Shown here: one piece after another, positions 42,901 through 64,000 of the stretch
How the letters are laid out: each line of letters starts with the position of its first letter
Position numbering within the stretch: position 1 is the first letter of the stretch
Source of the DNA: Macrostomum lignano
Lineage: Eukaryota
Assembly (NCBI GenBank): GCA_002269645.1
Contig: NIVC01002736.1
Coordinates: 34,473-98,472 of the forward strand
Direction of reading: 5' to 3'
DNA length: 64,000 nt
Notes under the pieces: model-generated
What the model was told of the DNA's origin: nothing
The model's database searches: none
What the model saw: the letters and a program-made list of their open reading frames with translations, nothing else
Translations under genes and position numbers: made by a program

Positions 42901-43352
42901 CACTAGAGAACAAGTAGAGCTAATAAATGTTCTAAATTTCTACAGTTAAAGTTTTTAACTTTACAACTTAATTTAACTTAACTTTTTCTAAGTTTTTATC
43001 AATTGATAATTTTTGTATTTAACCCATTTCTATGTTTAATATATTAGATATTGTCTTTAAAAGCCTATTGTTAGAATAAACAAACCAACAAACAAACATT
43101 TTACATGTTCAGTTCCTTGCATTTCCAGAAATAAGAAAATAATATTAAAATTATTAGTTTAGCTCAATTCAATAAAAAAATATTTTTGCAAACAAAACTG
43201 CACTGGTGCCTAACACACTAAATTTTTTTTTCTCTTTAAATATCTATAATAATAATAAATCAGAAAAATAACATGAATTATTTTATTTATTAGCTAAGTT
43301 TTTGAAACTATAAATAAAATAGGTCATATTTTTTGTTATATAAACATTAATA

Positions 43353-44206: not shown

Positions 44207-44208
44207 TA

Positions 44209-44880
44209 TTTGGCAGTCTATGGCAACTGCTCTAACCTGTTGAAGAAGAAAATTAAGAAAAGCTTCCGTAAATTCTTTAACATGCCTATTAAGATTGTTT
44301 TCCACACTGCTAAGGTCAGCCAATACGTTAGTAGACTGAAATTCCATGTTTCTCTTGCTCTGGTGGTAGGTATTGTGTATAAGTTCTCTTGTTCTGTTGA
44401 CCAGAACATTACCTATATAGGTAAAACTAAAAGGCACCTGTACACCATGTACACCTGTACAGCATTGGTTAAAAAGGTTGGCTATCCAAGACCACCTGCT
44501 CTATTGCAACAGTTGTTGCAAAATTGAGCAAACTCAGCAGTTTAAAATTATTGATCGGTGTAGAACTGATTTTAGGCTCAACATACTTGAATCCATGTAC
44601 ATTAAAGACCAAAAACCTAATCTGAATATTCAGCTCTCCCATAGTGGTGCGGGCCATTTGCTCAAGGTATTCTAAGTAAAGGCACTAGTCTGAACAATGT
44701 ACTTGCAATCTATGCTTAACATTTTTTGGAAAATTCTGCCCATGACATGCCCTTTGGACTGTACAGTTAACATTTGTTCACTTATAAAGTTGTTGTGTGA
44801 GTTAAAAATACACCAGACCCTGAAGATGGTCATTGTTGGACCAAAACGCGTCGGAAGAAAGAATTTATTATAATCTATGT
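44209..44880 (+). mobile_element. 5'-truncated Penelope-like retroelement fragment (GIY-YIG endonuclease remnant, frameshifted) with 3' pseudo-LTR
   Basis: GIVYKFSCSVDQNITYIGKTKRHL (GIY-YIG) followed in another frame by FKIIDRCRTDFRLNILESMYIKDQKPNLNIQ, typical of PLE C-termini; hammerhead motif downstream. Confidence 0.82.
44818..44854 (+). ncRNA. Minimal type-I hammerhead ribozyme of the Penelope element, core G12 apparently mutated
   Basis: CC-CTGAAGA-TGGTC-attgttg-GACC-AAAA-CGCG-TC-GG: CUGANGA box, stem II, GAAA box reading AAAA, palindromic ACGCGT stem III, UC cleavage site. Confidence 0.65.
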
Positions 44881-46825: not shown

Positions 46826-48367
46826 ATGGACTGCAATGACCTGCTAGGTGGTGATAGTAGAGACTTGGATCCACCAGCAGCTGATACTGCGCCAGATGGC
46901 GATGAGCGAACACCGCTGCTGATTACGCAATCGGCTACCTATCATCGTCATCAATATCAACATCTCCGTCATCATCATTTCCAGCATCATCAACAGGCAT
47001 CGAACGCGGCTGAGCAGCAGCAGCCGCAAACACCGCCTACCCCAGCACTCATGTCGTCATCTGACATGCAGTTCAGTTTGCAAATCCAGTGTCAACCTGG
47101 CGACGAACTGGCCAACAGTCTAGATTTTAGCAACAGCAGTACCCGGCATTGTCATAGCGGCGAAACTGAACGTCGATTTCGTTACATTGCCGCGCAGAAG
47201 CTTGCTCGCCGACGCCTGGTAATTGCAGCTGTAGCCTGTCTAGTCTTCATGATCGGAGAGGTGATTGGCGGCGCTATAGCCAATAGTTTGGCTATAATGA
47301 CTGACGCTGCTCATCTGTTAACGGATCTGACTAGTTTTCTCATCAGCTTATTAGCTCTGTTTCTGGCCACTAAGAGGCCTAGTAGAAGAATGAGTTTTGG
47401 TTGGTATCGAGCCGAAGTGATTGGAGCTCTGGTGTCCGTTCTGATGATTTGGATAGTCACAGCTGTGCTAGTCTATATGGCTGTGCATCGGGTTGTCCAA
47501 AAAGATTTCGAAGTCGAAGGTGAAGCCATGCTAATCACGGCAGGTGTTGGCGTAGCATTCAACATGTTGATGGCGTTGCTGTTACACCAGGGTCACGGAC
47601 ATTCGCACGGATTGCAGCGTCAGAATTGTCAGGCTGACGGTCCCCCAGCTGTCGCCGCGGATTCGTCTTCCCAGTCCACGGTTGATAAAGACGATGAAGA
47701 AGAGCCGCCGGAACCAGTCGATGTGGATGCGGCCGACACTGCTGGCATTGTTGAACGGGATTGTCAACGGAGACGCAGGCGTCCTGAGCATCATGCTGGC
47801 GATCATGAGCATCAGGAGCACGGCGAGCACGATCGTCATCACGAGCACATTGGCAGCAGTTTCGGTCACAATCACGCTCACAACAATATGAACGTTCGCG
47901 CCGCCTTCATACACGTTATTGGCGACTTATTGCAAAGCATTGGTGTATTAGTAGCGGCTCTTATCATTTACTATCGACCGGATTATAAACTGGCCGATCC
48001 GATATGCACGTTCGTATTCTCGCTGCTAGTTTTGGGAACTACAGTGAGCATACTGAAGGACACTGTCCGAGTGCTGCTGGAGGCCACTCCCCAGGGCATC
48101 GATGTGGCTAAGTTCCGGGCCGCTCTGGCTGCGCTACCCTGCGTGATTCAAGTGCACAGCCTTCGAGTTTGGAGTCTGACTCTTGGCCGCAATGTGGCCA
48201 GCGCTCATCTAGTTGTTAACTCCAATTGCGGCGTAGTGCAACGCGACAATCTTGTTGTCAAGGCAACGGAGCTATCTAAGAAGATTTTTCAAATGTCGGA
48301 CGTGACTCTTCAAGTTGAGCCGCATGTCTTAGAGATGGACAGTTGCGAGCATTGCAGATCTGTTTGA
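46826..48367 (+). CDS. SLC30A2: Cation diffusion facilitator zinc transporter, ZnT2/3/8 clade (intronless, 513 aa)
   Basis: SLAIMTDAAHLLTD (TM2 HxxxD), RRMSFGWYRAEVIGAL, His-rich loop, NMNVRAAFIHVIGDLLQSIGV (TM5 HxxxD), ADPICTFVFS, VHSLRVWSLT C-terminal domain. Confidence 0.93.
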   Translation: MDCNDLLGGDSRDLDPPAADTAPDGDERTPLLITQSATYHRHQYQHLRHHHFQHHQQASNAAEQQQPQTPPTPALMSSSDMQFSLQIQCQPGDELANSLDFSNSSTRHCHSGETERRFRYIAAQKLARRRLVIAAVACLVFMIGEVIGGAIANSLAIMTDAAHLLTDLTSFLISLLALFLATKRPSRRMSFGWYRAEVIGALVSVLMIWIVTAVLVYMAVHRVVQKDFEVEGEAMLITAGVGVAFNMLMALLLHQGHGHSHGLQRQNCQADGPPAVAADSSSQSTVDKDDEEEPPEPVDVDAADTAGIVERDCQRRRRRPEHHAGDHEHQEHGEHDRHHEHIGSSFGHNHAHNNMNVRAAFIHVIGDLLQSIGVLVAALIIYYRPDYKLADPICTFVFSLLVLGTTVSILKDTVRVLLEATPQGIDVAKFRAALAALPCVIQVHSLRVWSLTLGRNVASAHLVVNSNCGVVQRDNLVVKATELSKKIFQMSDVTLQVEPHVLEMDSCEHCRSV

Positions 48368-50331
48368 ATGAATGTTTTCATTTTTTGGCTCATCGATTCC
48401 TGTCAGTTGTTATAATCGAACTTAGTTATTATTACCACGTAGATAAGCAGTTAGAAGACTTAAATTAAAAGTACAGAGTCTTGGAGCAAAACTGAAAGTA
48501 TCAAACAGTTGTGATCGAATGCGATGGCGCATTAAAACCATGAGTTGAATTGTTTTTCCTCGCACTAAAACTTTGATTGTGGATCTTTTATCCTGTACTG
48601 ACACCTGGATTCGGATAACTATTGAAAACGAGCATATATGTGCATTATCTTTCTATTGATTATCGTTATTTTCTTTCGACAGCGTCAAGATTTTTGTATA
48701 GATTCTTAATTTTGCTGTAATTGTTTTGCATAATGAAATCTAATGCAAAATTGACAACGATTATAGCTTTGAATGAACTCATCATTTGTTCTGCGTATAT
48801 TACTTTGTAACTAAGTCTATTATAATATGATATATAACCAAGATGAAGTAACATATGCTTCCCAAATCCATTTCTGAAAATTCGATACATTCGATTCAGA
48901 TAGCGGTTCTTTTTCTTTTCTTGGGTTTGCGTTTTTTGATTTTGTATTTTTATCCCTTCTCTTAATTTTTTGTTTTTATTAGTGCCAGTACAGTATTGAT
49001 ATATATTAACTATAAAGTGTGAGCTTGAGCTGCTAAAATGTGTTCAATTCGTTGTCTTGATCGTTTTTTCTCCGACTATATGCGATGAGAGCGATTATCA
49101 AAATTATTTAAACTGTTTTGGGCCGTTTGTCTCATGTTTAAAAAAAACAATATCAAAATGATTACGCTGCTGAGTAATCTGTCATCTCATTCGATTATAA
49201 TTATTTTTCTTATCGAACGTACTTAATTGGGGCTGGATTTTGTTATACATATAGTTCGTGTTTATTTGAACGTACTTCAATTTATTTACAGAACGAATCC
49301 CTATTTTGTTAATGTCAATCTCAGTAGAAAAGCAATTGTCCGACAAAATTAATTTGATTTCTAGCAGCGCAACCGAGAGGAACTGTTCAATTAGTACGTG
49401 TGGCTCTCATGCGGCTATCATGTCAAATATAAATGGAGACGCGCAAATGTGCTACATGTTATTTTTTGCGCAAATTGTTCGTTTGATTTATTTATTTGTC
49501 AACTTAAGAAAATAGTTTTTTAGATCAAGAACCTCGTCCCTTTCCAATCAAGGCGTAGATTTAGGAGTCTGTCATTAAGGTATTTTGCTAACCTAAACCA
49601 TAATTCCTTAAAGCTGAAATTGTCAAATTCCTACGAGCGTAGCAATTCTTAGAATCTTGTGAAAGCAATTTCTGTTCCTGTTGAGCTCTTCTTCCTTGCG
49701 AGCATAGAATCTTGTCTCCCTTTGTCTTCCGTTTTACTTTTCTTGAGCAAAAGCAAAGCCAACTTCCCAATAACACAGGAAATTAAATTCTGTGTAATAT
49801 ATTCCACTCCTTATTGCTTGGCACGAATTAAAATCCAGAATGTTACCTTACAATCCCTGTTTTCTAAGGTCGATACTAGGCAGGTAGTTGCGAACTTTTT
49901 TTGTGAAAGTTGTCTCTAGAAGTAACGGGGTGAAAAATAGTCAGTCTTTATTAATCTCTTCTATAGCCTCGGGAATTTTGCTTTAATAATTCTTCGATTC
50001 TACTCTAAGATCGACTAGTTGCATGAATTAATTAATAAGACCCTCATTTTCTGAGATTCTTCTATTGTTTTTGAATATCTTGTTTTACGCAGTCAAGAGC
50101 ATGATGTGCACTTCAGATTTCGCATTAAGCAGCTTTTAACTTACTTTGTACTTAGACATTTTTATTAATAGTAATGACGCGGAAGATGCCGCAGTCTTAG
50201 CTGTCTATGTCTTTTCGAAACGTCGACTAAACAAACAATAGTATTAATCAAGCAAAACAAAAAGAATGGTTGCTCTGTTTGTAAATGACTTTGCACTTTT
50301 GTGTATCAGAGTTATGTTTATAAAAGAAGAT

Positions 50332-52334
50332 ATGTTTCTACTGCTGCTGAGCATTCTTAATCTTGTTATTCCTGCTGGCTGGGCTACTGTACCGTTGGAG
50401 CCGTATCCCGCTATCCAGTTTACTGTCGAGGACTCGATTACCATCAAAGATTACAGTAAAGCGCGCATCACGCTACTATCAGTTGGACAAGAGCGAACCT
50501 TAGTCTGCGAATCGCCGATTAGTGTATCTGCAAATAAGCGAAAAAACCTACAAATCGATTGGTACTTTGGCGATACAGATTCTCTGACTAAAATTATATT
50601 CGATAGCAACGGCTGGTCTCTGTCGCATCGTACTACTACGAATAACAGTAGTAGTAGCGCGTTTCGCATATTATTAGACGATGGTGTCTACCGCAACAGA
50701 GGTTCTATTGTTGTTAAGTCGAGCAATATCAGCAGCTTTAGCGATAAAAATGGCTTCAGGTGGGACATTTTAAAACCCGTCTGTGTCTTTCGCTTAAAGT
50801 TTAGGAAGTCAGGACGCTACAATTGCAAAACTTGCCGATCTTGAGAATACTTTTTTCGAACTTTAAGTGGAACTTTTGAATAAAGGATTGTGGATAAAGG
50901 CTCCACTCTGAAACCAGTGGTCGACTTTTCTCTGAGTTCAGAGCCCCAAGAGTAATTCCCAGGTCAGTGCAATTATGGCTAGAGTTGGATTAAAGGTTAC
51001 TTTTTGACCATTGCTTTGGGGTGTTTCTGAGTGAACAGTTTGCAGTAAAAACCATTCCGAGTTAGTATAATTTGCGAATGTAGCGTCTTTCAGACTCTCT
51101 ACTCAAGCCTTTGCTAGCGATATCTCAATTGTCGTCCAACGCGAACTCCACTTGCAGTTACAATCATCTCTTAAATGGAATTCTGGCTTGCGTCTATAGT
51201 CGCAGCGGTGATATCTCATCGATATTTCACTTGATGACTTTGTTGCCACCGTTGCCAATCAATCGTGAGTCTGCAGCGGTGACGCAGTGTCCACCAGGTC
51301 ACGCTGCGGCTAGTTACGCTGGTCTGTCAGTTTGTCAACCCTGTTTGCCTAATGAATTTTCGCCTGGCGGCGTGTCGCCTTGTCAGCCGTGTCGAGCTGG
51401 TCAGTTTAACAGTCGGTTTGCTAGTCCTGAATGCGCTAAACAACGGTTTAAACGATCGACAACAGCAGGGAAGGCGACTGTGTTAGTCATCATTTCGTCT
51501 GGGATTTATTTGGTTGGATTTGAAAATAAATAGTAGCAATGATAATGCAGAAGTTGTAAAGTGTTCTCCATTATACGCTCGTATAGAAGCCTAATTTTCA
51601 TTTCTAAGCCAAGTCACTAAACCAAATATTTTAGCACCATTACTTCAACAATCTAGACCAGGCCGCAGGGATCGGCAAACTCCGGCCCACGAAGCCTCTC
51701 TATCACGGATCTCGGGTCCTTTGAAACTTCACAATAGCAATCCAGTTCGCTCAAGGCTTGTGTCTCTTCTCATCTCTTCTATTTCGTCTCTCCTCTTCTC
51801 CTCTATTCCCTCGCCTCTCTTTTCTTTCTCTCTTCCCCTGCTCTGGTCCGCAGTCATGCGCTTGATTGTCTATCTGGCCCCTAAGATAAAAAAGTTTGCC
51901 TATCCCTGATTTTTACTATGCTTACCAGCTTTCAACTTTTACCAGCTAGATATGCTAATTGATCGAAATTTTTATGCTTGAAAATTTACAAGAGTAGGAG
52001 AACACTTTACAATGCACATGTGGCAAGGCTACCAAACAAGCAACCATAATTCAAAACGTGATCAACCACTGTAACAAATTCTTTCTCAAGGCATCTGATG
52101 CACCGGCGTCTTCCGCTAGCCGATTTTAGAAGCGTAATAATGTACCACTGTCTGCTAATATTGCTTCTGTCGGCGGTTGTCGTGGCTCTATTATTAGTCA
52201 GCGCACTAAGCTTTGAAACTGTTTGGCACGGCGTTCTATCCGGTATTGAAATGAGCATAGCTGGAGCTCTCGATGATAGATTTGTGCTAAAAGAACCCGA
52301 AGCCGATGGGAATAATGATACTCAGGAAGCTTGA
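50332..52334 (+). CDS. Uncharacterised type-I membrane protein: signal peptide, Ig-like domain, Cys-rich ephrin-receptor-like (GCC2/GCC3-type) module, TM, short acidic tail; exons ~50332-50759, (unresolved middle), 51094-51445, 52091-52334
   Basis: MFLLLLSILNLVIPAGWA signal; LVC..IDWY..SGRYNC Ig motifs; QCPPGH..CQPCLPNEFSPGGVSPCQPCRAGQF..C; the phase-2 join caacg|gtttaa to ctcaag|g gives KQR-HLMHRR then a TM. Splicing between 50760 and 51093 is not resolved. Confidence 0.6.
51666..51908 (-). mobile_element. hAT-type MITE (243 bp) in an intron
   Basis: 16-bp TIR CAGGGATCGGCAAACT / AGTTTGCCTATCCCTG (one mismatch); related copy at ~6000-6372; no clean 8-bp TSD. Confidence 0.75.
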
Positions 52335-52552
52335 AATCTGACTTCGTATAATTGATTTCGCATGTACTCAGTAGTACTCTTTACTATACAGAAGAGATAA
52401 AACAGATCAATAAATACACGTACTTTACTCGTCTATAGTGATTGAAAATAAATCAGTTCTTACTAGTATTCCACTTTTCCACTTATTTTTCAACTGAAAC
52501 TTTCGTTTTACTAATGAATTCTTGCAATAAAACTTTACTGCTGGCCAATTCT

Positions 52553-52554
52553 AG
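52553..52554 (+). promoter_or_regulatory. Unpaired splice acceptor upstream of ISCA1 (candidate SL trans-splice site)
   Basis: TACTAAT branch-like motif at ~52509 and caattctag| 19 nt before the ATG; AATAAA motifs of the upstream gene at ~52409 and ~52447. Confidence 0.45.
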
Positions 52555-52573
52555 CTAAAAACACAATACGTCA

Positions 52574-53065
52574 ATGCTGCCACATCGGGTTGCATCATCA
52601 TCACTGAGGCTTGTCGGCCTGTGCAGAGCCCTATCAGCCAATTCGCTATTTCATCAGCAGCAAACTATCCGATGCTTGGCTTCTGGCCTATCGGCCACAG
52701 TAATACCCGGTCGTGGGCCGAATTTCCGACCAACCCGATCGCCGCTAACCCTCACCCAAGCGGCTGTTGATCGAGTCAAAGCTGCACTGGCCGAATCCAA
52801 CGGTTCAGCTAAAGCGTTGAGAATTGGCGTCAGAACAAGAGGATGCAATGGACTGTCGTATACGCTGGACTATGCCAGCGAGAAAGCGGCCATGGACGAG
52901 ACGGTTGAACAGGACGGGGTGACGGTCTACATCGATCGGAAGGCTCAGCTCACACTGCTAGGCACAGAGATGGACTACGTGAAGGGTCCGCTAGTTAGCG
53001 AGTTTGTCTTCTATAATCCCAACGCTAAAGGTACCTGCGGTTGCGGCGAAAGTTTCAATGTCTGA
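52574..53065 (+). CDS. ISCA1: Iron-sulfur cluster assembly 1 homolog, mitochondrial (intronless)
   Basis: N-terminal R/S/L-rich presequence; LRIGVRTRGCNGLSY, LTLLGTEMDY, EFVFYNPNAKGTCGCGESFNV. Confidence 0.96.
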   Translation: MLPHRVASSSLRLVGLCRALSANSLFHQQQTIRCLASGLSATVIPGRGPNFRPTRSPLTLTQAAVDRVKAALAESNGSAKALRIGVRTRGCNGLSYTLDYASEKAAMDETVEQDGVTVYIDRKAQLTLLGTEMDYVKGPLVSEFVFYNPNAKGTCGCGESFNV

Positions 53066-53888
53066 TTTTGTCTACCCGTAGTTAGTTACTCATCCTTGGT
53101 TGCTTGCACTGCTTGCTCGTCTGTCAAATCACGGATACTAAAAACATTAATAGTCAAATGAAATCTGGGGTTCCTATTGGTTGAGAAGTGTTTTGTCTAT
53201 GACCGACAAAACCGCATTCTATACGCCCAAGAGATACAGTCGTAGTGGGCGTAATAAAACAGAACAATTTATTTATTTGGCCCCAATAATTAAAATTTGT
53301 TTCCGAATGATATTACGAGTACATTTAATACCTGACACTTACACTAACTTTATTGACTAAATATCCAGGAGTCCAGAAGGTAAAGAGTGCAACATCTTGC
53401 TACTTACTAGAAGTAGCAATCCACGAATTTTCTTTGCTTTCATTTTCATCAAAAAATAAAGGATTAAAATGTTTATCATTTCTATGTTAATTGAATGAAG
53501 AGATTTCTATGAATTTTTGCTTACTAATAATTTTCGCTTGTGTACATATCTGGGGAAGTATTTTTGTTTCGTTTTATCGTGTATAGATTAAAACGTCTGA
53601 ATATACGGTAGATCCCTCTTGGTGTCAGTTAATGACTTCAGAATGGGATCTGATCAGATAAGAATATGATGGCCTTGTGAATTGACCTTCTCTGAAAAAA
53701 TGATAAATATAAGTTTCATTTAGAATAGCTCCGTTTGCATTAGTGATTTCATTTTATAAAATAACCGAATGTCTTTTTCTGTGTTTTTTCTTTATTCCAA
53801 TAGATTTAGCCAGTGCAATTTACAGAAACGTTCATTTATAGTCAGGGTCAAGCTGTCGGTCTAGCCAAATGTACATTGATACTTAAAA

Positions 53889-54040
53889 CTCTACCCTTCC
53901 CTCGCCTGATCCTCGTCTGGGCATGAAGGCCTATCGAAATGTACGTTGATATTTGAATCTCTACCCCTCTCTCGTCTGATCCTCGTCTGTGGGCATGAAG
54001 GCCTATCGAAATGTACGTTGATATTTGAATCTCTACCCCT
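53889..54040. repeat. Tandem duplication of a 70-72 bp unit (2 copies plus a partial)
   Basis: CTCTACCC...CTGATCCTCGTCT..GGGCATGAAGGCCTATCGAAATGTACGTTGATATTTGAAT occurs twice. Confidence 0.9.
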
Positions 54041-54564
54041 CCGCCCGAGTCTTATCTGCCTCATAGTGCAAATGTAACAGGTCGAATTTTAATCCAAAAC
54101 TGCCGTACAAAACTGTCTCCTCCTATTTCCTAGCAACTGCACATGCTGATAGTCAACATTCATAAGTTTTGTTTCCTGCATTTCTTTTTTTCGATTGGCG
54201 CTTCCGTTAATGAGCAACAGCATTAAGAACTTGTTACAACTTGTTAAAAATCGATCGAAATAAGAAATAAGCCTCTTGTCTGTGGCAGTCACCCATTCTT
54301 ACAATAGCGATTTCAGCCCGTCCTTTGTATGACCTTTATCTATGCTGATAGATAAAGTAAAATAGACTGCCAACTTTACGAGTAGTAATACACTTGCTAC
54401 TTGTAGGTAAAGAAACCAAACAGTATTTTTTTGCAACAGCGCTACTCATAGTTCATATCCGATTTTATTCGTTCTCTAACAAACGATAATTAGTTGATCG
54501 AATTACACCAGATTTACTTCTCAAAAATATTGGTTTATTCCATCCTCTGTAACTCTCAGTCTTC

Positions 54565-55214
54565 TTAACGCGAGCCAATTCTGTTAGTCGTCCCAGTTTC
54601 GATTTCATCTTGCATTGCCGTCTCATCAAACTCATACGGTGCAACTTGCAACTCAAAAGACAGCGGCCATATTGGATCCTGTGGGATTGGCTATGTGGTT
54701 GTTATCGTTGTCTTCGTCTTAATAGGTAAAGACTATTAATAGAGACATCACTTACCAGGCGTTTGTAAGCCTTGAGTCTGGCTAATAGCAGGTGTTGCAG
54801 GTCTACCTGGTTCCCAATTGTCATCGGCTCATCTAGCGAGCCCTGGGAGTCATGGACAGCGCTCTTCAGAGCTCGTTTAACATTCCCTGCGAAGTATTTC
54901 GACCGCGAGTTAAATGACTAAAAAACAGCTAGAGCATCACATTACCATGTACAAGTATGGAAGTACTCACACGAGTAGCAGTAGTGCAAATTGATGTGGT
55001 CGGAACAAACTGAAACGTAAATTACAAATCGTCTAGTGAGAAAATTTTCTGCTCAGTCAAACTTGATACAAAGCTTTTTTAAAAAAAACGCATGGTCTAT
55101 TTTCTTGAACAAAGACCTACCAGCATGAGAGTCTCCGAACTCGATCAGACAAGCAGCACAGAGAGCTACAATCAGCAGCTTCCAGGATCGATTTGTTCCA
55201 GCTAGCGACATCAT
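54565..55214 (-). CDS. Putative neuropeptide precursor (~125 aa); exons 55214-55121, 55009-54971, 54886-54756, 54678-54565
   Basis: Canonical GT-AG introns with matching phases give MMSLAGTNRSWKLLIVALCAACLIEFGDS-HAVCSDHINLHYCYSWNV-KR-ALKSAVHDSQGSLDEPMTIGNQVDLQHLLLARLKAY-KR-LDPIWPLSFELQVAPYEFDETAMQDEIETGTTNRIGSR*. Signal peptide, two KR sites, AATAAA ~26 nt after the stop. The last acceptor is less certain. Confidence 0.7.
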
Positions 55215-55744
55215 GGTTATGATGATTGATTAGCTTTCTAAGAAAAGATTACCAAAATGGACGATCCAACACTCGATTTGCTTCAAATACAGCTGTGTAT
55301 TTCAGCCGTATATATCATGCACAAAGCTGAATTTTATCGAATATAAAAATCCTTAACTGTGATTCGTTGGGCATTCTGAATGGTCCTGCAGTCCAGTCTA
55401 TGCAGACGGAATCTATATCGGCAGCTATACTACTAATAGTATCATAATACATTTATAGTCACTGGATAAACGGACCTCTGAATAATTTATGCACGACAAC
55501 CCACGGGTTCATTTCCAAGTGTGACGTCATCACGCTTTTACTTACACGATGTACATTGAACACAGATTGATGGTGCTTAATAAACGTTACTCATCAGGTA
55601 AAAACGTTACTATAGATTTACATGTATACTAGCCTCCCCCTTCGGGGCGGCCAAAAAATACGTGTAGGCAAGGAACGAAGGTTGTTTATGTGGATCCCAT
55701 TTGCCTTTATCCTATTTAGCAATTTCCCTTGTAATATTTGGCAA

Positions 55745-55905
55745 ATGAGTGCCTGCAGCGCTAAAATGAGTTCCTGCGGCGCCAAAATGATTACATCAGG
55801 CGTCAAAATGGATGTCTACCTGTAACGCAAAAATGAGTACCTGCGGCGAAAAAAGGAGTGCCTATGGTACCAAAATGAATGTCTTCCTGCGGCTCGGCGC
55901 TAAAA
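55745..55905. repeat. Degenerate ~21-bp tandem (AAAATGAGTNCCTGCGGCGC)
   Basis: About 7 diverged copies read directly. Confidence 0.7.
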
Positions 55906-57109
55906 ATTATAGATTTATAACTGTAATCGTTAAAAAGATCTATGACCCCAATATATCAGCACAGGTATACTAATATAGCATTTTTATTGAAGATTTTATT
56001 TAAGAATTCGAGCACTCATTCAGGGCATTGCCAATCGCATTTAAAGTTTCTACTTTCGTCTATGGTTAAACACCGTCTATGGCACAGGCACGGACTGAGC
56101 ATGAATTAAGACACAGACATGCAGCAGATGCTAATAAAGTTGTATAGTCCACGGGACGAAATCAATCTACAGGGTTGGCGTTCCATGGTACTGCAGAGAC
56201 CCTGGAGTGGATCACTCTGTCCTTGCCTCGCTGTTTGGCCCGTGAAAACATGATTGAGCACATGGGTTCTGAAGGTTTAGTCACAGTTGCAGACTTTCTG
56301 CATGCGTCACAAACTACACGATCTTGTCTAATGGCTCTGAGTTTAATGTCTGGCGGCTTCAACTGTTGGATGTCTGAAATTCAATGCTCTTCTCAATACA
56401 CGGTTTTGGTCATAGACAATCGTGGAAGCGCGGGTTGAATACCGCTTGGCCGTATCTTGAATCGAATGCACGACTTCTTAAATTAGCTGAAAATGCTAAT
56501 TTTTCTCCCATAGCCAATTTTCTACAATATTTTGCAATCGAATTTTTATTTCTTTCCTTGAAGAAGCTGTCACAGATTTTTCGCTCAGCTAACCAAGTAG
56601 AGTATTTAATCAGCTGCCCACAACAGCTGAACGGCTGCGTGACAAAGCGTGAATTGAGAAATTGAAGAGAATTCGTCAATTCACAATGACAGCTTCTCAT
56701 AAAATTAGAATTCTATCGTTTGGCACGATTGATAAGCAATAAAGAGCAATGCATTAATAAAGCTCTAATGGTGTAAAATCGACGACAAGAAAGTTGGAAT
56801 TACATAGTATTTACCATTTTATAAATCTACCAAATTTATTCAATAATTATGATCATTGATTTATAAAAGTTTTAGATGTGCGGTATAATTAACTGTAAAC
56901 TATGAGAACGACATCGAGGTACGAATCGAACGCATAGCATAATAAATATAACTGATTATTATAGTACTCAAAATTGCATATCGTATTTACACCGAGTGCA
57001 GAGTAGTCCAGAGTCAAATTAAGCATCAAAGTTTTACAACAGTAATATTATCCACACAGTCACGTGCAAATAATAAAATAGTTCTCCAAATTTTTTTACA
57101 TATAAGAAG

Positions 57110-57430
57110 CGCTCCTTATCACCCATTGGCTAAAGCCCCCACCCCACCCCTAGAGAATCCTAGAATATACAGCTAGACTAAGATAAGAGAAACTCATCGC
57201 TCATTGGCTAGAGACCCCACCCCACCCCAGAGAATACGAAAATGTACAGCTAGACTAAGATAAGAGAAACTCCTTTTCGCTCATTGGCTAGAGACCCCAC
57301 CCTACCCCACCCTAGTTCTAGAAAATCCCAGAATGTACAGCTAGACTAAGATAAGAGAAGCCCCTTATCGCTCATTGGCTGGAGCCCCCACCCCACCCCA
57401 GTTCCAGGGAATCCGAGAATGTACGCAGCT
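57110..57430. repeat. Four ~80-90 bp tandem units carrying CCAAT, CCCCACCC and AGATAAGA motifs
   Basis: CATTGGCT at 57124, 57202, 57282, 57373. Confidence 0.85.
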
Positions 57431-57595
57431 AAAAGCAACTACTCGATGTTGGTTGGCTAAACCCAGTCACTCTTATCGAAGTTGGTGATACACAAAAAAT
57501 GTTAACAATTGTTGAGTTTGTGTTTCTTGTTTAAAGAAGTGCCTTTCAAAATATCAATTTTTAAGACATTTTAAGACAGCTGAATTCATTTATAA

Positions 57596-59942
57596 TCAGC
57601 CCTCCATTAGCGACTGCTCGCACACCTGACGCTCGAGCGAGAATCGATAAGCGTACTCTGCTTCAATTTGTTCTGGCGACTTGATAACAATTTCATTTAA
57701 ATTAAAACCGCCAATCGTGGCCGCTTCGGAGCTGGCGTTCCCGCCCCAGCGTCGGCTGAGCTCGAATGGTATGCCGGACAATGGGTCGCGAATTTTGCTC
57801 GGCTGCCGACTCGGCGGAGGTCGCTGCGGCTGTACATTGATCTGTTGGACTCCGGCTCCTCGCTGCTGCTGCGACTGCGACTTCTGCTGCTCCACCGGGC
57901 CGTTCTTGACGCACAGAGTGAAACTGTTGAACTCGCTGTTTGCGGGTGGCAATTGGATGAACTAGTTACCGAGTGCCTGCTGTCTATCTCATATCTCATC
58001 TCACCCCTATCCTGCTCTCAATCTCACCCTATCCTACTCTCGATCTCACCCTATCCTATTCTCAAACTCACCCTATCCTTACTCTCAATCTCACCCTATC
58101 CTTACTCTCAATCTCACCCTATCCTTCTCTCAATCTCACCCTATCCTTACTCTCAATCTCACCCTATCCTTCTCTCAATCTCACCCTATCCTTACTCTCA
58201 ATCTCACCCTATCCTTCTCTCAATCTCACCCTATCCTTACTCTCAAACTCACCCTATCTTTCTCTCAATCTCACTCTATCCTATTCTCAAACTCACCCTA
58301 TCCTTACTCTCAAACTCACCCTATCCTATTCTCAAACTCACCCTATCCTTACTCTCAATCTCACCCTATTCTATTCTCAAAGTCACCCTATCCTTACTCT
58401 CAATCTCACTCTGTCCTATTCTCAAACTCACCCTTTCCTTACTCTCAATCTCACCCTATCCTATTCTCAATCTCACCCTATCCTTACTCTCAATCTCACC
58501 CTATCCTATTCTCAAACTCACCCTATCCTTACTCTCAATCTCACCCTATCCTTCTCTCAATCTCACCCTATCCTTCTCTCAATCTCACCCTATCCTATTT
58601 TCAAACTCACCCTATCCTTACTCTCAATCTCACCCTATCCTTACTCTCAATCTGACCCTATCCTTGCTCTCAATCTCACCCTATCCTTACTCTCAATCTC
58701 ACCCTATCCTACTCTCAATCTCACCCTATCTTTACTCTCAATCTCACCCTATCCTATTCTCAAAATCACCCTATCCTTACTCTCAATCTCACCCTATCCT
58801 TCTCTCAAACTCACCCTATCCTTACTCTCAATCTCACCCTATCCTATTCTCAAACTCACCCTATCCTTACTCTCAATCTCACCCTATCCTTCTCTCAATC
58901 TCACCCTATCCTTCTCTCAATCTCACCCTATCCTATTTCAAACTCACCCTATCCTTACTCTCAATCTCACCCTATCCTTCTCTCAATCTCACCCTATCCT
59001 TCTCTCGATCTCACCCTATCCTTCTCTCAATCTCACCCTATCCTTCTCTCGATCTCACCCTATCCTACTCTCAATCTCACCCGATGACAGCGTATCCGGC
59101 GGGAGGGCGCTTCTGCTTCCCCAGCAGAATGATGTCATTAATAGCCGAAGTGGCCTCGGATTTGCGCTGCATCTTCACAGCCAGTTGCTTCTTTTTCAAC
59201 GCCTTCTCCTCTGCAATAAAGAAACGAATATAAAACACTTGATTTACTACTTAATAAAGCAGTAGAAAATACTGCAAAAATTACAAATACGCATAAAATG
59301 GGAAAAGCACACAAAATAGTTTATAGCTTATAAAAATTTAGAGTTTATAAAGTTTCGAGTTTATGAAGTTTCAGGTTCGTGAAGTTTCGAGTTTATGAAG
59401 TTTCGTGTTCATGAAGTTTCGAGTTTTTTAAGTTTCGAGTTCATAAAGTTTCGTGTTCATGAAATTTCGAGTTTTTGAAGTCTCAAGTTCATGAAGTTTC
59501 GAGTTCATGAAGTTTCGAGTTCATGAAGTTTCGTGTTAATGAAGTTTCGTGTTTTTGAAGTTTCGAGTTTATAAAGTTTTGAGTTCATGAAGTAACTCAC
59601 GAGTATCGCAGGTGGTCTCAATGATAGTGAACTGATCCGGCACATCCATCGGGCCATTGCAGACGGCTAAATCGCAGAGCACCTGGTCGGAGTCCTGATA
59701 ACTAACACACAGGTAGCGCGTCACTCGCCGACTCAAGAAACCGTCTTTCCACAGGTCGGCATCTTCGCGACTGTCGTGAGTCTGCGTAATCTGTAAGAGA
59801 AATTTAATTAATTAATTTACTCTTTTACAATTGGGAAGTTAAATAGTTGTAAGCTTGACCGCATTATACTACTTACAGGCGAGTATTTCGGTGGCGCTTT
59901 GTTCGGATCCGTGACAATTTTCAGGTCCGTTATGTTGGCCAT
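57596..59942 (-). CDS. MVB12: Multivesicular body subunit 12 (ESCRT-I; MABP + UMA domains); exons 59942(59967)-59877, 59790-59601, 59210-59081, 57935-57596, plus a 17-nt 5' exon 61206-61190
   Basis: Spliced 241 aa: MANITDLKIVTDPNKAPPKYSP-ITQTHDSREDADLWKDGFLSRRVTRYLC...QEKALKKKQLAVK..INDIILLGKQKRPPAGYAVIGEFNS...LSGIPFEL...EYAYRFSLERQV. DLWKDG..VTRYLC and the C-terminal UMA motif match MVB12/FAM125. Confidence 0.9.
57990..59080. repeat. Intronic 21-23 bp minisatellite TCTCAATCTCACCCTATCCTTAC containing the MVB12 5' splice-site motif in each unit
   Basis: Read directly; the - strand unit is GGATAGG-GTGAGATTGAGAGTAA. Confidence 0.95.
59335..59592. repeat. Intronic 16-bp minisatellite AAGTTTCGAGTTCATG
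   Basis: Read directly. Confidence 0.9.
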
Positions 59943-60139
59943 CGGATTGAGTAGATATTTTTTGTAGCTGTCAATCACTCAGACAAAAGGAAAGATATCT
60001 AGTTTGACCAATTTTGATAGCTAGCTGTATTGGAGACCTAAACCGTGGGGGTGAATCATGCAGTAAAATTCAATATTTTTAATAATCACGTTTTTTCTCA
60101 AGCTAGCTATTCCCAATATCAACATTACCCTTTAACTGG

Positions 60140-60980
60140 CCTGTCCAATCTGACTACTAGTCCATCTAATCTGACTACTAGTCCATCTAATCTGACTACT
60201 AGTCCATCTAATCTGACTACTAGTCCATCTAATCTGACTACTAGTCTATCTAATCTGACTACTAGTCTATCCAATTTGATTACTAGTCCATCCAATCTGA
60301 TTACTAGTCTATTCAATCTGATTACTAGTCTATCCAATCTGATTACTAGTCTATCCAATCTGATTACTAGTCTATCCAATCTGATTACTAGTCTATCCAA
60401 TCTGATTACTAGTCTATCCAATCTGATTACTAGTCTATCCAATCTGATTACTAGTCTATCCAATCTGACTACTAGTCTATCCAATCTGACTACTAGTCTA
60501 TCCAAGCTGATTACTAGTCCATCCAATCTGATTACTAGTCTATCCAATCTGATTACTAGTCTATCCAATCTGATTACTAGTCTATCCAATCAGATTACTA
60601 GTCTATCCAATCAGATTACTAGTCCATCCAATCTGATTACTAGTCCATCCAATCTGATTACTAGTCTATCCAATCTGATTACTAGTCTATCCAATCTGAT
60701 TACTAGTCTATTCAATCTGATTACTAGTCTATTCAATCTGACTACTAGTCTATCCAATCTGACTACTAGTCTATCCAATCTGATTACTAGTCTATCCAAT
60801 CTGATTACTGGTCCATCCAATCTGATTACTAGTCTATCCAATCTGATTACTAGTCTATCCAATCTGATTACTGGTCCATCCAATCTGATTACTAGTCTAT
60901 CCAATCTGACTACTAGTCTATCCAAGCTGATTACTAGTCCATCCAATCTGATTACTAGTCTATCCAATCTGATTACTACC
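60140..60980. repeat. 21-bp minisatellite CTAGTCTATCCAATCTGATTA in MVB12 intron 1
   Basis: Read directly; 7-aa period SLSNLIT. Confidence 0.95.
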
Positions 60981-61206
60981 ATTTGCGATCTGCAAAAAAT
61001 TAAAGAACAACACAAGCAACTGGATGCCAAATATTTCCAATCAGAAATTGAGTAAAAAAACGAGACAAAAATGCTACTTACGCACGCGTGATAACGCTTA
61101 CTTCTGAATTACATCAACATTACCCTTACCAACTAACTGCAAATTAGTATTCCTTAGTATTTGTTTTCTTCTATTATTAAAAAACGTACCCAATGTCCTC
61201 TGTCTT

Positions 61207-61245
61207 CTGAAGAACAAAATAGATTAACAATCAGTCAATCAACAT
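61207..61245 (-). promoter_or_regulatory. Strong unpaired splice acceptor between NudC and MVB12 (candidate SL trans-splice site)
   Basis: - strand: gattgactgattgttaatctattttgttcttcag|aagacagaggacattgg|gtacgt, ~240 bp after the stop of intronless NudC. Confidence 0.55.
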
Positions 61246-61447
61246 ACGGAATTAGCGAATGGGAAACGTTATTTTAACGATAAGAGGAACGCGTTTAGAT
61301 ATATTACTGTCAGTAGTTTTATAGCGAATCGATTGATTTTGCCGAGTCTAGAACAGATATTAATTATTAACCGAATTTTAGTCTATTAAAGTTGACAGCA
61401 GGCGTTTGTTTGTTTAAAGACACGTCAGCTTCAGACGCCAGAGGCTT

Positions 61448-62461
61448 TCAATTGAACTTGCAATTAGAAAAGTCCATCTCCGGATGTTGCTTCATAAATT
61501 TCTGCAATATTTCATTCTTCTTTTGATCTTCGCTAGTTGGCAAGCCGAGCTCCTTCTGCCTCTGGTCGTACATCATCTTCTCAACAATTGATCTAGTCTC
61601 GCCGTCCAGATCGCTCAGCTTAGAATTCTCCGGTTCAACTTTTTTAGTGTTAATAACCGGATCAGTGGTGACAACTTGACCCCACCATTCCATCTGGTTG
61701 ACCTTCTCTAGGCAGATAATCAGAGTCTTGCCCTCGTCCAGAGTCCAAGTGGACTCGTCCGGTTTAATATGATGAGCCAATTGGCCGTGCAGAATCGGCG
61801 GCTGATTGCGCAATCCGGCGGTTATGTCAGACTTGGTAATGCTCACAGTCAGATCCCGGCCCTTCACCTTCACTGGCAGTGGGACTCGAATCTCAAGATC
61901 CCTCAGCGTCTGTGTCCAACTGTAATTCTCATAGTCGCCTCCATTGCCAGCATTCGGCTTCATCTTGCCCTTGTCCTCAGCGGATTCTTCCTCTTCAGCG
62001 GCATCGCCGTCGCCTTCTTTTTTCTTTGTAGTAGTAGCAGTAGCCGCCTCGCCATTGTCCGACTCTTTCGCCGTTGTTGATGAAGACGCCGGGGCATCAT
62101 TCGATTTTTTGTTCTTTTCGGCGTCTAATTCTTTCTGAAGCTGTTCCGCTTCGGCGTCAGTTAGTTCTTGGACTCGCGGGTCGCCGGCGGCGGCTTTTGC
62201 GGCGGCCTGTTTCTCGCGTTTTTTAGCTTCAGCCTCGGCTTTCTCTTTGGCTCGCTTCTCTTCAGCCTGGCGTTTGTGCAGTCGGAATGCTTTGAGCACG
62301 AGCTGTTCGCAGTCTTTGCTGCCCTGACCAACATAGAAATCTGTGCGCCTAGCCAAGAAGCCAAAGAATGTGTCCAGGATTTCAACTACGCCGCCCTCTT
62401 TGCACTGCTCGGCAATTGTCATGTAGACATTGTCGCAGTAGGATTGCTTCTGCTCATCCAT
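61448..62461 (-). CDS. NUDC: Nuclear migration protein NudC (intronless; ATG at 62461, 337 aa)
   Basis: [13 protein letters not shown]-terminal domain; [23 protein letters not shown] domain; [10 protein letters not shown]; [31 protein letters not shown]; [11 protein letters not shown]. Confidence 0.96.
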
Positions 62462-64000
62462 TGTGTTGTATACTGCTTTATTTGCTTGCTTCAAGATTTT
62501 ACTGCAATTTTGTTATGAAGAATGAAGTTGAAATAGATACTTGCAATATACTTAATAAGACATTTCAGCTAGTTCACTATCCATTGATTTCTTTGTTAAG
62601 CAAATCACCCTTGGTAATTAGTAGGTCAAGTTATAAGACTTCAGCTTTACTTAGGTTTGGGTATTTTTATTTGTGCAAAAAACTATCCTTAATTATTAAA
62701 TTGAATGGCACACAGATTTTTTGACTATTTTTGTACTGCTATACATTATACACAGCATTTTGAAAGAAAATACCAATAACTACCATGACATGTTTTGCAA
62801 AAAAAAACAAATTTTTAGGATTGATTTGCATGATTTATAGTATAATTGTTTACTATAAAACAATGGACTATAGTTTTAGCCAAAAAAGCAAATTATAGAT
62901 GATAGTATACTACATTTATATTTATTAGATGATTCTTAACTATCATAAGTATTTGTTAAATATATTTATTAATATTAATATTAAAACAAATTTACATTTA
63001 ATGAAACAAGCTTGATTTATATTTCCTCCATAACATTATTCTTCTACTAAACTTTTTTTTAAAGTTAGATTATTGTATTATTGATTTATATGCATTTAAT
63101 TGACCCATAAGCCAATTTATACCCTTTGTGGACACATGCTTACCACTACTATTGTCTTTATTGCATTTATTTTATATTGTCTATTTTCCTTTGCATTAAT
63201 GATTGTAATGATAAATTATGAAAGTTATAAAAGCTATCAAGTACAGGATGTGCATGAAATTAACTAATTTGAGAAAAAAATAACTAAAACCTAGGCTTAT
63301 AGACAACAAACACCTTTAAAATTGGGTACATAAAATTAATCCTTATAAAGAATCTTTTTAACCTTAAATTCCTATCTCTATATTTTAGCAATTGATTTTT
63401 AATTTCTATATCGATGAAATCCAGTTTTTAGGAGCTGAGAATTATAGCTTATAGAAAATTATACATAAGAATTATATTAAAAACTTAAATACATCTCCAT
63501 ATCTCTAGTTAAGATTAGATATATACTACATTAATGCGTCCAAAAAGTTCTTAGATGCCCCTCCTATCTCTGCATCTGTTCAATCGATTTTTAAAAAAAG
63601 GACACAAACATGGACCTATATATAATCAATTCAGTATTAAAGTTTCAGCTTAATTGGGTTGACAGAGCAAAAGCAATTGATCATTTACAAAGGAACCTAC
63701 AAAATTAGCAATAGGATTTTAAACTTAGCAAAATTTGAAAGTTAACAAGCAAACAGTTCAAACTGACAAGTCCAAAACTTCAAAAATAGATCACCAATTG
63801 TGAAAATCTTCAGAAGAATATTCATTCCATCAAATGTGCTTGTCATATTGCATTGGCAACTCCTGATCCTCAATTCATGCCAATCCCTAGGTGTCACTCT
63901 GATCAGCCTCTCAGTAGCCACTTGCAGCTTGGGGAAGCTGGCAAACTGCTGGGGGATACACCAAGGTGAATTTTCTATGGGAGGGGGATACACCAAGGTG

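What the first reader, a model, noticed from the sequence alone, without database searches (positions are those of the whole stretch)
54565..55214. Hidden four-exon neuropeptide precursor encoding a cyclic CX8C peptide
It is absent from the ORF track because the exons are 39-131 nt. Splicing gives signal peptide, HAVCSDHINLHYCYSWNV, KR, spacer, KR, acidic tail: a classic prohormone layout. The CX8C ring spacing is shared with elevenin/L11 and vertebrate MCH (which ends CWQV; this ends CYSWNV), but the ring residues match neither, so it may be a new or highly derived family. I do not recognise it as a described flatworm peptide.
Basis: partly seen in the sequence, partly recalled or inferred. 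Interest (0 to 1): 0.8.

Follow-up and report, generated by a model that had tools for sequence, protein, structure and literature searches.

The report
Flatworm excitatory-peptide-like ring peptide precursor gene
This is a real four-exon gene of the flatworm Macrostomum lignano, already deposited as a "hypothetical protein", that encodes a small secreted hormone-type precursor. Its disulfide-ring peptide is most likely a highly diverged, non-amidated relative of the excitatory peptide/GGNG/CCHamide neuropeptides, a family I found no report of in flatworms.

Summary
On the minus strand at 54565-55214 lies a GT-AG four-exon gene encoding a signal peptide, (HA)VCSDHINLHYCYSWNV, KR, a spacer and an acidic tail.

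The window is M. lignano contig NIVC01002736.1, and the gene equals GenBank model PAA55563.1 (125 aa). That annotation was built from RNA-seq transcript assemblies.

Two old paralog groups in the same genome keep only HAVCxDxxNLHYCYxWNVKRAL. Synonymous sites there are saturated (pS about 0.9) while pN is about 0.1, so the ring peptide and its KR are under strong purifying selection.

No relative was found outside M. lignano. Elevenin and MCH are not supported as relatives.

The flatworm peptide shares with it:
- the His two residues before Cys2, the Asn four after it, and the KR position;
- the gene structure: the ring sits on a 39-nt microexon (42 nt in EP genes) between two phase-1 introns, and the second intron splits the codon at Cys2+3, as in four real EP genes. 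Elevenin genes use phase-2 introns.

It lacks the ring Trp, the Gly-Gly and the amidation Gly of EP. Receptor and expression are untested.

The parts
55121..55214 (-). Exon 1 (94 nt). ATG at 55214-55212. Encodes the signal peptide MMSLAGTNRSWKLLIVALCAACLIEFGDSHA plus the first base of the Val32 codon. Ends in phase 1.
   Evidence: Hydrophobic core LLIVALCAA (9-residue Kyte-Doolittle mean 3.1). Cleavage sites compatible with the (-3,-1) rule are GDS|HAVC and SHA|VCS. Identical in all three near-identical copies.
55010..55120 (-). Intron 1 (111 nt, GTAGGT...TTTCAG), phase 1. It splits the codon of the residue just before Cys1.
   Evidence: 11 of 113 alignment columns vary among the three copies. 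Real EP genes have a phase-1 intron 2-3 codons before Cys1.
54971..55009 (-). Exon 2, a 39-nt microexon encoding (V)CSDHINLHYCYS(W). It carries the whole Cys33-X8-Cys42 ring.
   Evidence: Invariant among the three copies. Paralogs have the same 39-nt phase-1/phase-1 exon with many synonymous differences. Counterpart of the 42-nt ring microexon of Patella, Ruditapes and Intoshia EP genes (45 nt in Bradybaena).
54887..54970 (-). Intron 2 (84 nt, GTGAGT...TCGCAG), phase 1. It splits the Trp45 codon, the third residue after Cys2.
   Evidence: Same phase and same position relative to Cys2 and to N-x-K-R as in four EP genes.
54756..54886 (-). Exon 3 (131 nt), encoding (W)NV, the processing site K48-R49 (54873-54878), the spacer ALKSAVHDSQGSLDEPMTIGNQVDLQHLLLARLKAY, and K86-R87-L88.
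   Evidence: NVKRA is invariant in all paralogs, and L82, Y85 and R87 are also invariant. One synonymous difference among the three copies.
54679..54755 (-). Intron 3 (77 nt, GTAAGT...CCACAG), phase 0, as in the deposited model.
   Evidence: Phase-0 intron in the C-terminal Leu-rich region, as in Patella, Bradybaena and Ruditapes EP genes and in bombesin-type genes (PMC12002301).
54565..54678 (-). Exon 4 (114 nt), encoding the acidic tail DPIWPLSFELQVAPYEFDETAMQDEIETGTTNRIGSR. Stop codon TAA at 54565-54567.
   Evidence: identical to P0003/PAA55563.1. The three differences among the copies are all non-synonymous (F/Y, T/P, R/G), so the tail is weakly constrained.
54534..54539 (-). AATAAA poly(A)-signal-like hexamer starting 26 nt after the stop codon. 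A second one starts at window 54469.
   Evidence: Sequence motif only; the actual 3' end was not checked.

Best explanation
The locus is an expressed M. lignano gene for a 125-aa secreted prohormone.

Inferred processing:
1. The signal peptide is removed near residue 29-31.
2. Cys33 and Cys42 form a disulfide ring.
3. A prohormone convertase cuts after K48-R49, and a carboxypeptidase trims the KR.
4. The product is a 16-18-residue cyclic peptide, (HA)VCSDHINLHYCYSWNV, with a free C-terminus. It is not amidated, because no Gly precedes KR.
5. The remainder, apart from a short Leu-x-x-Tyr-x-Arg helix motif, is a poorly constrained propeptide.

The gene belongs to a small M. lignano family of three old paralog groups, and each group is present in several near-identical copies.

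I consider it most likely a strongly diverged flatworm homologue of the spiralian excitatory peptide (EP/GGNG) and arthropod CCHamide precursors. In that case it would signal through a G-protein-coupled receptor of the EP/CCHamide/bombesin/endothelin clade. By analogy, it would act on gut or pharynx muscle, feeding or ciliary locomotion.

Shown: the gene structure, the annotation built from transcript assemblies, selection on the peptide and its KR, and the structural and positional matches to EP genes.

Inferred: processing, disulfide formation, secretion from neurons or endocrine cells, the receptor class and the physiology.
For: Gene reality.

Prohormone logic:
- Among paralogs 33-38% identical overall, only HAVCxDxxNLHYCYxWNVKRA plus L82, Y85 and R87 are invariant.
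- Over the 22 core codons, pS is 0.90-0.93 against pN 0.08-0.11. P0005 versus P0006 gives dN/dS 0.035.
- The recent copies show no change in the signal-peptide and ring exons, while the introns vary.
- AlphaFold finds no folded domain (mean pLDDT 41.9).
- The peptide is uncharged to slightly acidic, so it is not like an antimicrobial peptide.
- M. lignano has a prohormone convertase 2 homologue whose in situ pattern suggests nervous-system-specific expression and whose knock-down is lethal (PMC4490696).

EP link:
- The precursor plan is the same: signal peptide, then a single peptide, then a dibasic site (PMC6617912).
- The CX8C spacing is that of all trochozoan EPs.
- Key residues match: His at Cys2-2 (+5.3 bits), Asn at Cys2+4 (+4.3 bits), Ser/Thr after Cys1, an aromatic residue after Cys2, and KR at the same distance. 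Permutation p is 0.007-0.03 against 20 EP cores.
- hhalign of the M. lignano family against EP/CCHamide precursors gives P = 1.9e-4 over 51 columns, including the downstream Leu-rich helix. 0 of 150 column shuffles reach that score.
- Gene structure: in Patella, Bradybaena, Ruditapes and Intoshia EP genes the ring lies on a 42-45-nt microexon between two phase-1 introns. The second intron splits codon Cys2+3, the next exon starts N-G-K-R, and the three mollusc genes also have a phase-0 intron in the C-terminal region (Intoshia lacks it). The flatworm gene and both paralog groups have a 39-nt microexon, phases 1/1/0, the same split codon, and N-V-K-R.
- Elevenin genes, by contrast, have phase-2 introns, one in the middle of the peptide (PMC9963005, PMC4237046).
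- Bombesin-type genes, the deuterostome relatives of EP, also have a phase-1 intron in the peptide and a phase-0 intron in the C-terminal region (PMC12002301).
Against: - The non-Cys residues score negatively overall against the EP matrix (-12 to -14 bits).
- Three EP features are missing: the ring Trp (present in 20 of 20 EP cores), the Gly/Ala pair after Cys2, and the amidation Gly.
- With Cys and KR held fixed, shuffles come close to the hhalign score (maximum 26.3 against 26.5; 4 of 150 reach it for the trochozoan-only profile).
- Control: elevenin versus EP gives the same hhalign score range (23.7-28.3). The sequence statistics alone therefore do not separate families.
- Intron 1 sits 1 codon before Cys1 rather than 2-3, and phase-1 introns after signal peptides are common anyway.
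- Intron 3 cannot be aligned exactly.
- No intermediate forms or orthologues were found outside M. lignano. An EP-profile search found no flatworm member, though that search is word-based and short multi-exon genes such as this may be absent from predicted proteomes (my inference).
- Receptor, expression site and mature peptide are all untested here.
Confidence: 0.6

Rival explanations
1. A Macrostomum-restricted orphan neuropeptide or peptide-hormone family with no ancestry in the EP/CCHamide family. The CX8C ring, the KR spacing and the microexon would be convergent or coincidental.
For: No homologue outside M. lignano in 1.84 billion representatives or in a profile search of 5.8 billion proteins. 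No Pfam family. Overall negative score against the EP matrix and missing W, GG and G. The hhalign score level does not discriminate, since elevenin versus EP scores the same.
Against: The exact coincidence of the phase-1 intron in codon Cys2+3, followed by N-x-K-R, in four EP genes and all three flatworm paralog groups. The conserved His and Asn sit at the two most informative EP positions. The precursor plan is identical. My rough estimate of the chance of the two intron matches is about 1e-3, and it is post hoc.
Confidence: 0.27
2. A secreted peptide with a non-hormonal role, such as an antimicrobial, toxin, seminal-fluid or adhesive-gland peptide.
For: It is small and secreted, with one disulfide and a lineage-restricted distribution. 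No expression data could be obtained here.
Against: The ring peptide has no Lys or Arg and carries one Asp, so it is not cationic. The peptide is under strong purifying selection, not diversifying selection, across paralogs with saturated synonymous sites. Only the peptide plus its KR is conserved, which is the hallmark of a convertase-processed ligand.
Confidence: 0.08
3. An elevenin-type or MCH-type precursor.
For: The CX8C spacing is shared. The elevenin peptide also follows the signal peptide and precedes KR.
Against: Elevenin: matrix permutation p = 0.62-0.91, and hhalign scores 10.5 without aligning the ring. Elevenin genes have two phase-2 introns, one in the middle of the peptide (PMC9963005, PMC4237046), against phases 1/1/0 with an uninterrupted ring here. 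MCH: from my own knowledge, it lies at the C-terminal end of its precursor and is a deuterostome family.
Confidence: 0.03
4. Not a functional gene: a chance spliced ORF or an annotation artefact.
For: None beyond the small size of the gene.
Against: A gene model from a transcript-based annotation, three syntenic copies with exon-specific conservation, and old paralogs with dN/dS well below 1.
Confidence: 0.02

Closest known systems
Excitatory peptide / GGNG peptides of annelids, molluscs, nemerteans, brachiopods and orthonectids (orthologues of arthropod CCHamide, related to bombesin/GRP/NMB and endothelin systems)
   Same: - Signal peptide directly followed by one peptide copy and a dibasic site.
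- CX8C ring.
- His two residues before Cys2, preceded by a hydrophobic residue.
- Aromatic residue after Cys2, Asn at Cys2+4, KR at Cys2+6/7.
- Leu-rich helix motif in the propeptide.
- Ring encoded on a 39-nt (42-45 nt in EP genes) microexon between phase-1 introns, with the second intron in codon Cys2+3.
- Phase-0 intron in the C-terminal region.
   Different: - No ring Trp (Ile/Val instead), and no Gly after Cys1+1.
- Y-S-W or Y-A-W in place of x-G-G.
- Val in place of the amidation Gly, so a free C-terminus.
- No Lys before Cys1, so the microexon is one codon shorter.
- Three old paralog groups.
- Receptor unknown.
Elevenin (L11) precursors
   Same: CX8C ring. The peptide lies near the N-terminus of the precursor and is followed by KR with a five-residue tail. 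Elevenin receptors are related to EP/CCHamide receptors (PMC12002301).
   Different: The ring and tail consensus C-[RW]-K-x-x-[FY]-x-P-x-C-R-G is absent. Elevenin genes have phase-2 introns, one in the middle of the peptide sequence. Here the ring is uninterrupted and the introns are phase 1/1/0.
Melanin-concentrating hormone (MCH)
   Same: CX8C ring and a short aromatic-containing tail after Cys2 (CWQV against CYSWNV).
   Different: MCH is the last peptide of its precursor, preceded by a dibasic site (not followed by one), and is known from deuterostomes. The ring residues are unrelated. These MCH features come from my own knowledge and were not tested with tools.
Bombesin-type (GRP/NMB/BN) precursor genes of deuterostomes
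   Same: [quoted passage not shown]
   Different: Bombesin-type peptides have no cysteines and are amidated. There is no detectable sequence similarity.

Membership tests
EP/GGNG/CCHamide precursors | [quoted passage not shown] | tested here: met
   Between 0 and 6 residues lie between the likely signal cleavage site and Cys1-1. KR is invariant in all paralogs.
EP/GGNG/CCHamide precursors | Two cysteines; CX8C spacing in trochozoan-type EPs | tested here: met
   15 of the 17 spiralian EP sequences examined are CX8C, and two are CX7C. The flatworm peptide is CX8C.
EP/GGNG/CCHamide precursors | His near Cys2 and an aromatic residue inside the ring (PMC6617912); Trp at ring position 4 in all CX8C EPs | tested here: inconclusive
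   His at Cys2-2 is present (+5.3 bits), and Tyr lies inside the ring. The Trp, invariant in 20 of 20 EP cores, is replaced by Ile or Val.
EP/GGNG/CCHamide precursors | Gly-Gly or Gly-Ala between Cys2 and the C-terminus | tested here: not met
   YSW or YAW instead. The orthonectid EP has L-S-A, so the feature is not absolute.
EP/GGNG/CCHamide precursors | C-terminal amidation signal (Gly before the dibasic site); described as usual, not universal | tested here: not met
   Val47 precedes KR in all paralogs. Exceptions in the family: the tardigrade EP lacks the Gly (PMC6617912), and the purified earthworm GGNG peptides are non-amidated (PMC12969411).
EP/GGNG/CCHamide precursors | Asn at Cys2+4 and dibasic site at Cys2+6/7 (trochozoan type) | tested here: met
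   (+4.3 bits for Asn).
EP/GGNG/CCHamide precursors | Gene structure: ring on a microexon flanked by phase-1 introns, second intron in codon Cys2+3, phase-0 intron in the C-terminal region. I derived this here from four EP genes; it is not a published criterion for EP. | tested here: met
   Patella (L007), Intoshia (L008), Bradybaena (L009) and Ruditapes (L010) against the window gene and paralogs in L004 and L005. Intron 1 is offset by 1-2 codons. Intron 3 matches only in phase and region, and only in the three mollusc genes; Intoshia has no such intron.
EP/GGNG/CCHamide precursors | Statistically significant sequence similarity to the family profile | tested here: inconclusive
   hhalign P = 1.9e-4 and probability 47%. 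0 of 150 full shuffles reach the score, but 0 to 4 of 150 do when Cys and KR are fixed. The elevenin-versus-EP control scores the same. The local Pfam copy gives no hit even for real EPs.
EP/GGNG/CCHamide precursors | Ligand of a receptor of the EP/CCHamide (bombesin/endothelin-related) clade, the criterion the field treats as decisive | not testable with these tools
Elevenin (L11) | Ring and tail consensus C-[RW]-K-x-x-[FY]-x-P-x-C-R-G | tested here: not met
   Matrix permutation p = 0.62-0.91. hhalign scores 10.5 with no ring alignment.
Elevenin (L11) | Conserved gene structure: phase-2 introns, one in the middle of the peptide coding sequence (PMC9963005, PMC4237046, PMC6585902) | tested here: not met
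   The window gene has phases 1, 1 and 0, and the ring is uninterrupted. The elevenin side is taken from the literature only.
MCH | Peptide at the C-terminal end of the precursor, preceded by a dibasic site; ring CMLGRVYRPC | tested here: not met
   The peptide directly follows the signal peptide and is followed by KR and 76 more residues. The MCH features are from my own knowledge.
Convertase-processed prohormone (generic) | Signal peptide, conserved dibasic site flanking a conserved short peptide, unconserved remainder | tested here: met
   No SignalP or NeuroPred was available; the signal peptide was judged from hydropathy and the (-3,-1) rule.
Convertase-processed prohormone (generic) | Expression in neurons or endocrine cells and detection of the mature peptide | not testable with these tools
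   The gene identifiers appear in no main text of the library and in none of the supplements checked.

The most novel reading that the evidence does not exclude
The three paralog groups are a genuinely new, Macrostomum-specific (or flatworm-specific) cyclic neuropeptide family with its own receptor. It would have arisen independently of EP/CCHamide and converged on the same ring size, processing-site spacing and microexon layout.
Probability: 0.25. Interest if true: 0.55.

Novelty: new variant of a known kind. Interest (0 to 1): 0.45.

Why it matters
Flatworm neuropeptide sets are, from my own knowledge, considered strongly derived, with several ancient bilaterian families regarded as missing. 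In the papers I could search, EP/CCHamide peptides are reported from annelids, molluscs, nemerteans, brachiopods, entoprocts, rotifers, an orthonectid and ecdysozoans, but not from Platyhelminthes.

A non-amidated EP-type peptide in an early-branching flatworm, kept in three old paralog groups, would be a "hidden orthologue". It would show how far a ligand can drift while its gene skeleton persists.

It would also give an experimentally tractable worm (RNAi, transgenesis) a candidate gut, feeding or locomotion peptide to pair with a receptor.

There is a practical lesson too. A 39-nt microexon carrying the whole ring may explain why protein-level searches miss such genes. Intron phase and position is a usable criterion when the sequence signal has faded.

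Tried and rejected
- phmmer of the precursor against 1.84 billion representatives found only M. lignano paralogs, plus one spurious repeat-containing 7-TM protein, P0007.
- A word-indexed profile search with the paralog alignment found only M. lignano.
- Pfam gave nothing, even for real EPs.
- Full-text searches for the peptide string and for the four gene identifiers gave nothing. Supplements of two M. lignano transcriptome papers gave nothing. Motif fragments in the nemertean/brachiopod/phoronid proneuropeptide list gave only chance hits.
- McVeigh 2009 (PMC2749192) is not held. Koziol et al. 2016 (flatworm neuropeptide discovery, cited from memory) was not looked up. Prior description there cannot be excluded.
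- The elevenin and MCH readings were rejected on residues, architecture and gene structure.
- The antimicrobial reading was rejected on charge and on the mode of selection.
- AlphaFold gave no confident fold (pLDDT 41.9), so no fold search was run.
- The three ~97% identical copies are too close for dN/dS, so I used a test of variable columns in exons against introns instead.
- I could not fetch elevenin loci for a direct gene-structure control, because look-ups accept only proteins returned by the capped search. I used published statements instead.
- The Lineus and Ostrea EP loci were not on record.
- No tRNA or Rfam family is present in the window.
Full report
**What is there**

The finding lies on the minus strand. 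The exons are 94, 39, 131 and 87 nt, and all three introns are GT...AG. No prokaryote-style ORF of 60 aa or more covers the gene.

A search of 5.8 billion proteins returned one cluster at 91% identity. Its members are all Macrostomum lignano "hypothetical protein" or "Secreted protein" entries. One member, PAA55563.1 (BOX15_Mlig023371g2, 125 aa), is encoded on contig NIVC01002736.1 of GCA_002269645.1. The fetched locus is identical to the window over all stretches compared: a 3-kb block around the gene and the 650-bp gene span.

Exon 4 starts at 54678 (acceptor cccacag|G), not 54651 (acceptor ttttgag|T), which adds DPIWPLSFE. The upstream site is the canonical acceptor, and paralog P0008 has a matching DPIEIL in the corresponding C-terminal part.

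The Mlig_3_7 GenBank annotation was produced from genome-guided RNA-seq transcript assemblies with TransDecoder ORFs (PMC5730564). The deposited model therefore comes from a transcript-based annotation, although I did not see reads myself.

**Is it more than chance?**

Yes, on three independent grounds.

1. The annotation is built from RNA-seq transcript assemblies.
2. The genome holds three syntenic copies about 97% identical, each flanked by NudC, an unnamed 241-aa gene, an IscA-like gene and a ZnT gene. This fits the known redundancy of the DV1 line. Among these copies, exons 1-3 have 1 variable column in 264, and that change is synonymous. The introns have 16 in 274 (p = 2e-4). Exon 4 has three changes, all non-synonymous.
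3. An exhaustive phmmer search found two further M. lignano paralog groups, Mlig002632 and Mlig031250. They lie head to head on contig NIVC01001937.1, with their start codons about 8.5 kb apart. They share only HAVC[STA]D[GH][VI]NLHYCY[SA]WNVKRAL and a short L-x-x-Y-x-R motif with the window gene. They have the same 39-nt microexon with phase-1 introns on both sides. Over the 22 core codons, pS is 0.90-0.93 against pN 0.08-0.11. Between the two paralogs dN/dS is 0.035.

The ring peptide and its KR have therefore been held constant while everything else, synonymous sites included, turned over.

**How it most likely works**

The N-terminus has a basic n-region and the hydrophobic core LLIVALCAA. 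Cleavage sites compatible with the (-3,-1) rule are GDS|HAVC and SHA|VCS.

The invariant KR after Val47 is a classical convertase site. M. lignano has a prohormone convertase 2 homologue whose in situ pattern suggests nervous-system-specific expression and whose knock-down is lethal (PMC4490696).

The predicted product is a 16-18-residue peptide with one disulfide (Cys33-Cys42) and a free C-terminus. It has no Lys or Arg. AlphaFold finds no folded domain (mean pLDDT 41.9), which is consistent with a precursor rather than a small globular protein.

The acidic tail evolves freely. Secretion, processing, disulfide formation and cell type are all inferred.

**What it resembles: sequence evidence**

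No relative exists outside M. lignano at the sensitivity available, and there is no Pfam family. I took real sequences from supplements.

- **Elevenin.** Against an elevenin matrix, the flatworm residues do no better than shuffles (p = 0.6-0.9). hhalign does not align the ring.
- **EP, position matrix.** Against 20 distinct EP cores, the total score excluding Cys is negative (-12 to -14 bits). The ring Trp, the Gly residues and the amidation Gly are missing. The arrangement still beats shuffles (p = 0.007-0.03), because His at Cys2-2, Asn at Cys2+4, Ser/Thr after Cys1 and the aromatic residue after Cys2 are in place.
- **EP, profile comparison.** hhalign against EP/CCHamide precursors gives P = 1.9e-4 over 51 columns, including the downstream Leu-rich helix. 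0 of 150 column shuffles reach this score. With Cys and KR fixed, however, the best shuffles come close. The elevenin-versus-EP control reaches the same score.

Sequence alone therefore cannot assign the family.

**What it resembles: gene structure**

I mapped four real EP genes, with these results.

| Gene | Exon 1 end \| ring microexon \| next exon | Microexon |
|---|---|---|
| Patella caerulea | ...TVS(G)\|KCSGRWAIHACFG(G)\|NGKR | 42 nt |
| Ruditapes philippinarum | ...TVY(G)\|KCSGRWAIHACYG(G)\|NGKR | 42 nt |
| Bradybaena similaris | ...PAS(A)\|SKCRGEWAIHACFG(G)\|NGKR | 45 nt |
| Intoshia linei | ...YLN(Q)\|KCQGIWRVHFCLS(A)\|NGKR | 42 nt |
| M. lignano (window) | ...DSHA(V)\|CSDHINLHYCYS(W)\|NVKR | 39 nt |

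Residues in brackets are codons split by phase-1 introns.

The flatworm microexon also has phase-1 introns on both sides, and the second intron sits in exactly the same codon, Cys2+3. The three mollusc genes and the flatworm gene also share a phase-0 intron in the Leu-rich C-terminal region. Its exact position cannot be aligned.

Published work gives two controls:
- Elevenin genes have two phase-2 introns, one in the middle of the peptide (PMC9963005, PMC4237046, PMC6585902).
- Bombesin-type genes, the deuterostome relatives of EP/CCHamide, have a phase-1 intron within the peptide and a phase-0 intron in the C-terminal region. This has been used as evidence of orthology (PMC12002301).

My rough estimate of the chance of the two intron matches is about 1e-3. 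It is post hoc and allows for the commonness of phase-1 introns after signal peptides.

**Membership**

I do not file this gene as a confirmed EP/CCHamide member. Two typical features are absent (the Gly-Gly and the amidation signal), the invariant Trp is missing, and the field's decisive criterion, the receptor, could not be tested.

I rate "diverged EP-type homologue" at about 0.6 and "independent orphan ring-peptide family" at about 0.27. The remainder goes to non-hormonal secreted peptide, elevenin/MCH type, or artefact.

**Novelty and interest**

The gene model is public but uncharacterised. No paper in the searchable library holds the peptide string or the gene identifiers. The EP surveys I read do not list flatworms, and an EP-profile search found no flatworm EP. 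Two flatworm neuropeptide catalogues (McVeigh 2009, Koziol 2016) were not consulted: the first is not held and the second was not looked up.

This is a new variant of a known kind. It is of moderate interest to people working on neuropeptide evolution and flatworm neurobiology, and it is directly testable in M. lignano.

Noticed in passing
window 1-38000: An almost continuous field of more than 25 different minisatellite arrays, with periods of 15-47 nt and lengths of 0.3-3.3 kb (for example a 39-nt unit repeated 84 times at 7980-11276). This explains the extreme swings in GC skew and the many spurious long ORFs there.
   Followed up: partly
window 46985-62488; L001, L002, L003: The gene sits in a conserved block: ZnT-type cation efflux gene (46985-48367, +), IscA-like Fe-S gene (52562-53065, +), the peptide gene, an unnamed 241-aa gene (57596-59942, -) and NudC (61448-62488, -). 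The block occurs three times in the assembly at about 97% identity, introns included.
   Followed up: partly
window 57994-59082: A 22/45-nt minisatellite of about 1.1 kb lies inside the span of the neighbouring 241-aa gene, presumably in an intron. A 21-nt array at 60144-60978 lies between that gene and NudC.
   Followed up: no
P0010 (UniProt A0A1I8HT83), paralog locus L004: One deposited paralog model lacks the 39-nt ring exon (...APHA-G-NVKR...). Skipping that exon keeps the reading frame, so this is either a real ring-less isoform or a missed microexon.
   Followed up: no
L004 1350-1765 and 9736-10151: The two head-to-head paralogs share a 416-nt, 99% identical inverted repeat. It carries exon 1, the 5' region and the start of intron 1, each followed by minisatellite repeats (about 21-nt register). 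Their ring exons, by contrast, differ at dS of about 1.1. This suggests gene conversion or a recent inverted duplication of the 5' ends. The P0005 model has an 8.3-kb first intron.
   Followed up: partly
L007 (Patella), L009 (Bradybaena), L010 (Ruditapes): Mollusc EP genes keep their 42-45-nt ring microexon isolated between very large introns: 33 kb and 11.5 kb in Patella, 52 kb and 5.9 kb in Bradybaena. In M. lignano the corresponding introns are 111 and 84 nt.
   Followed up: partly
window 40001-46000: A low-GC stretch (0.30-0.34) between the minisatellite field and the gene block. It was not examined.
   Followed up: no
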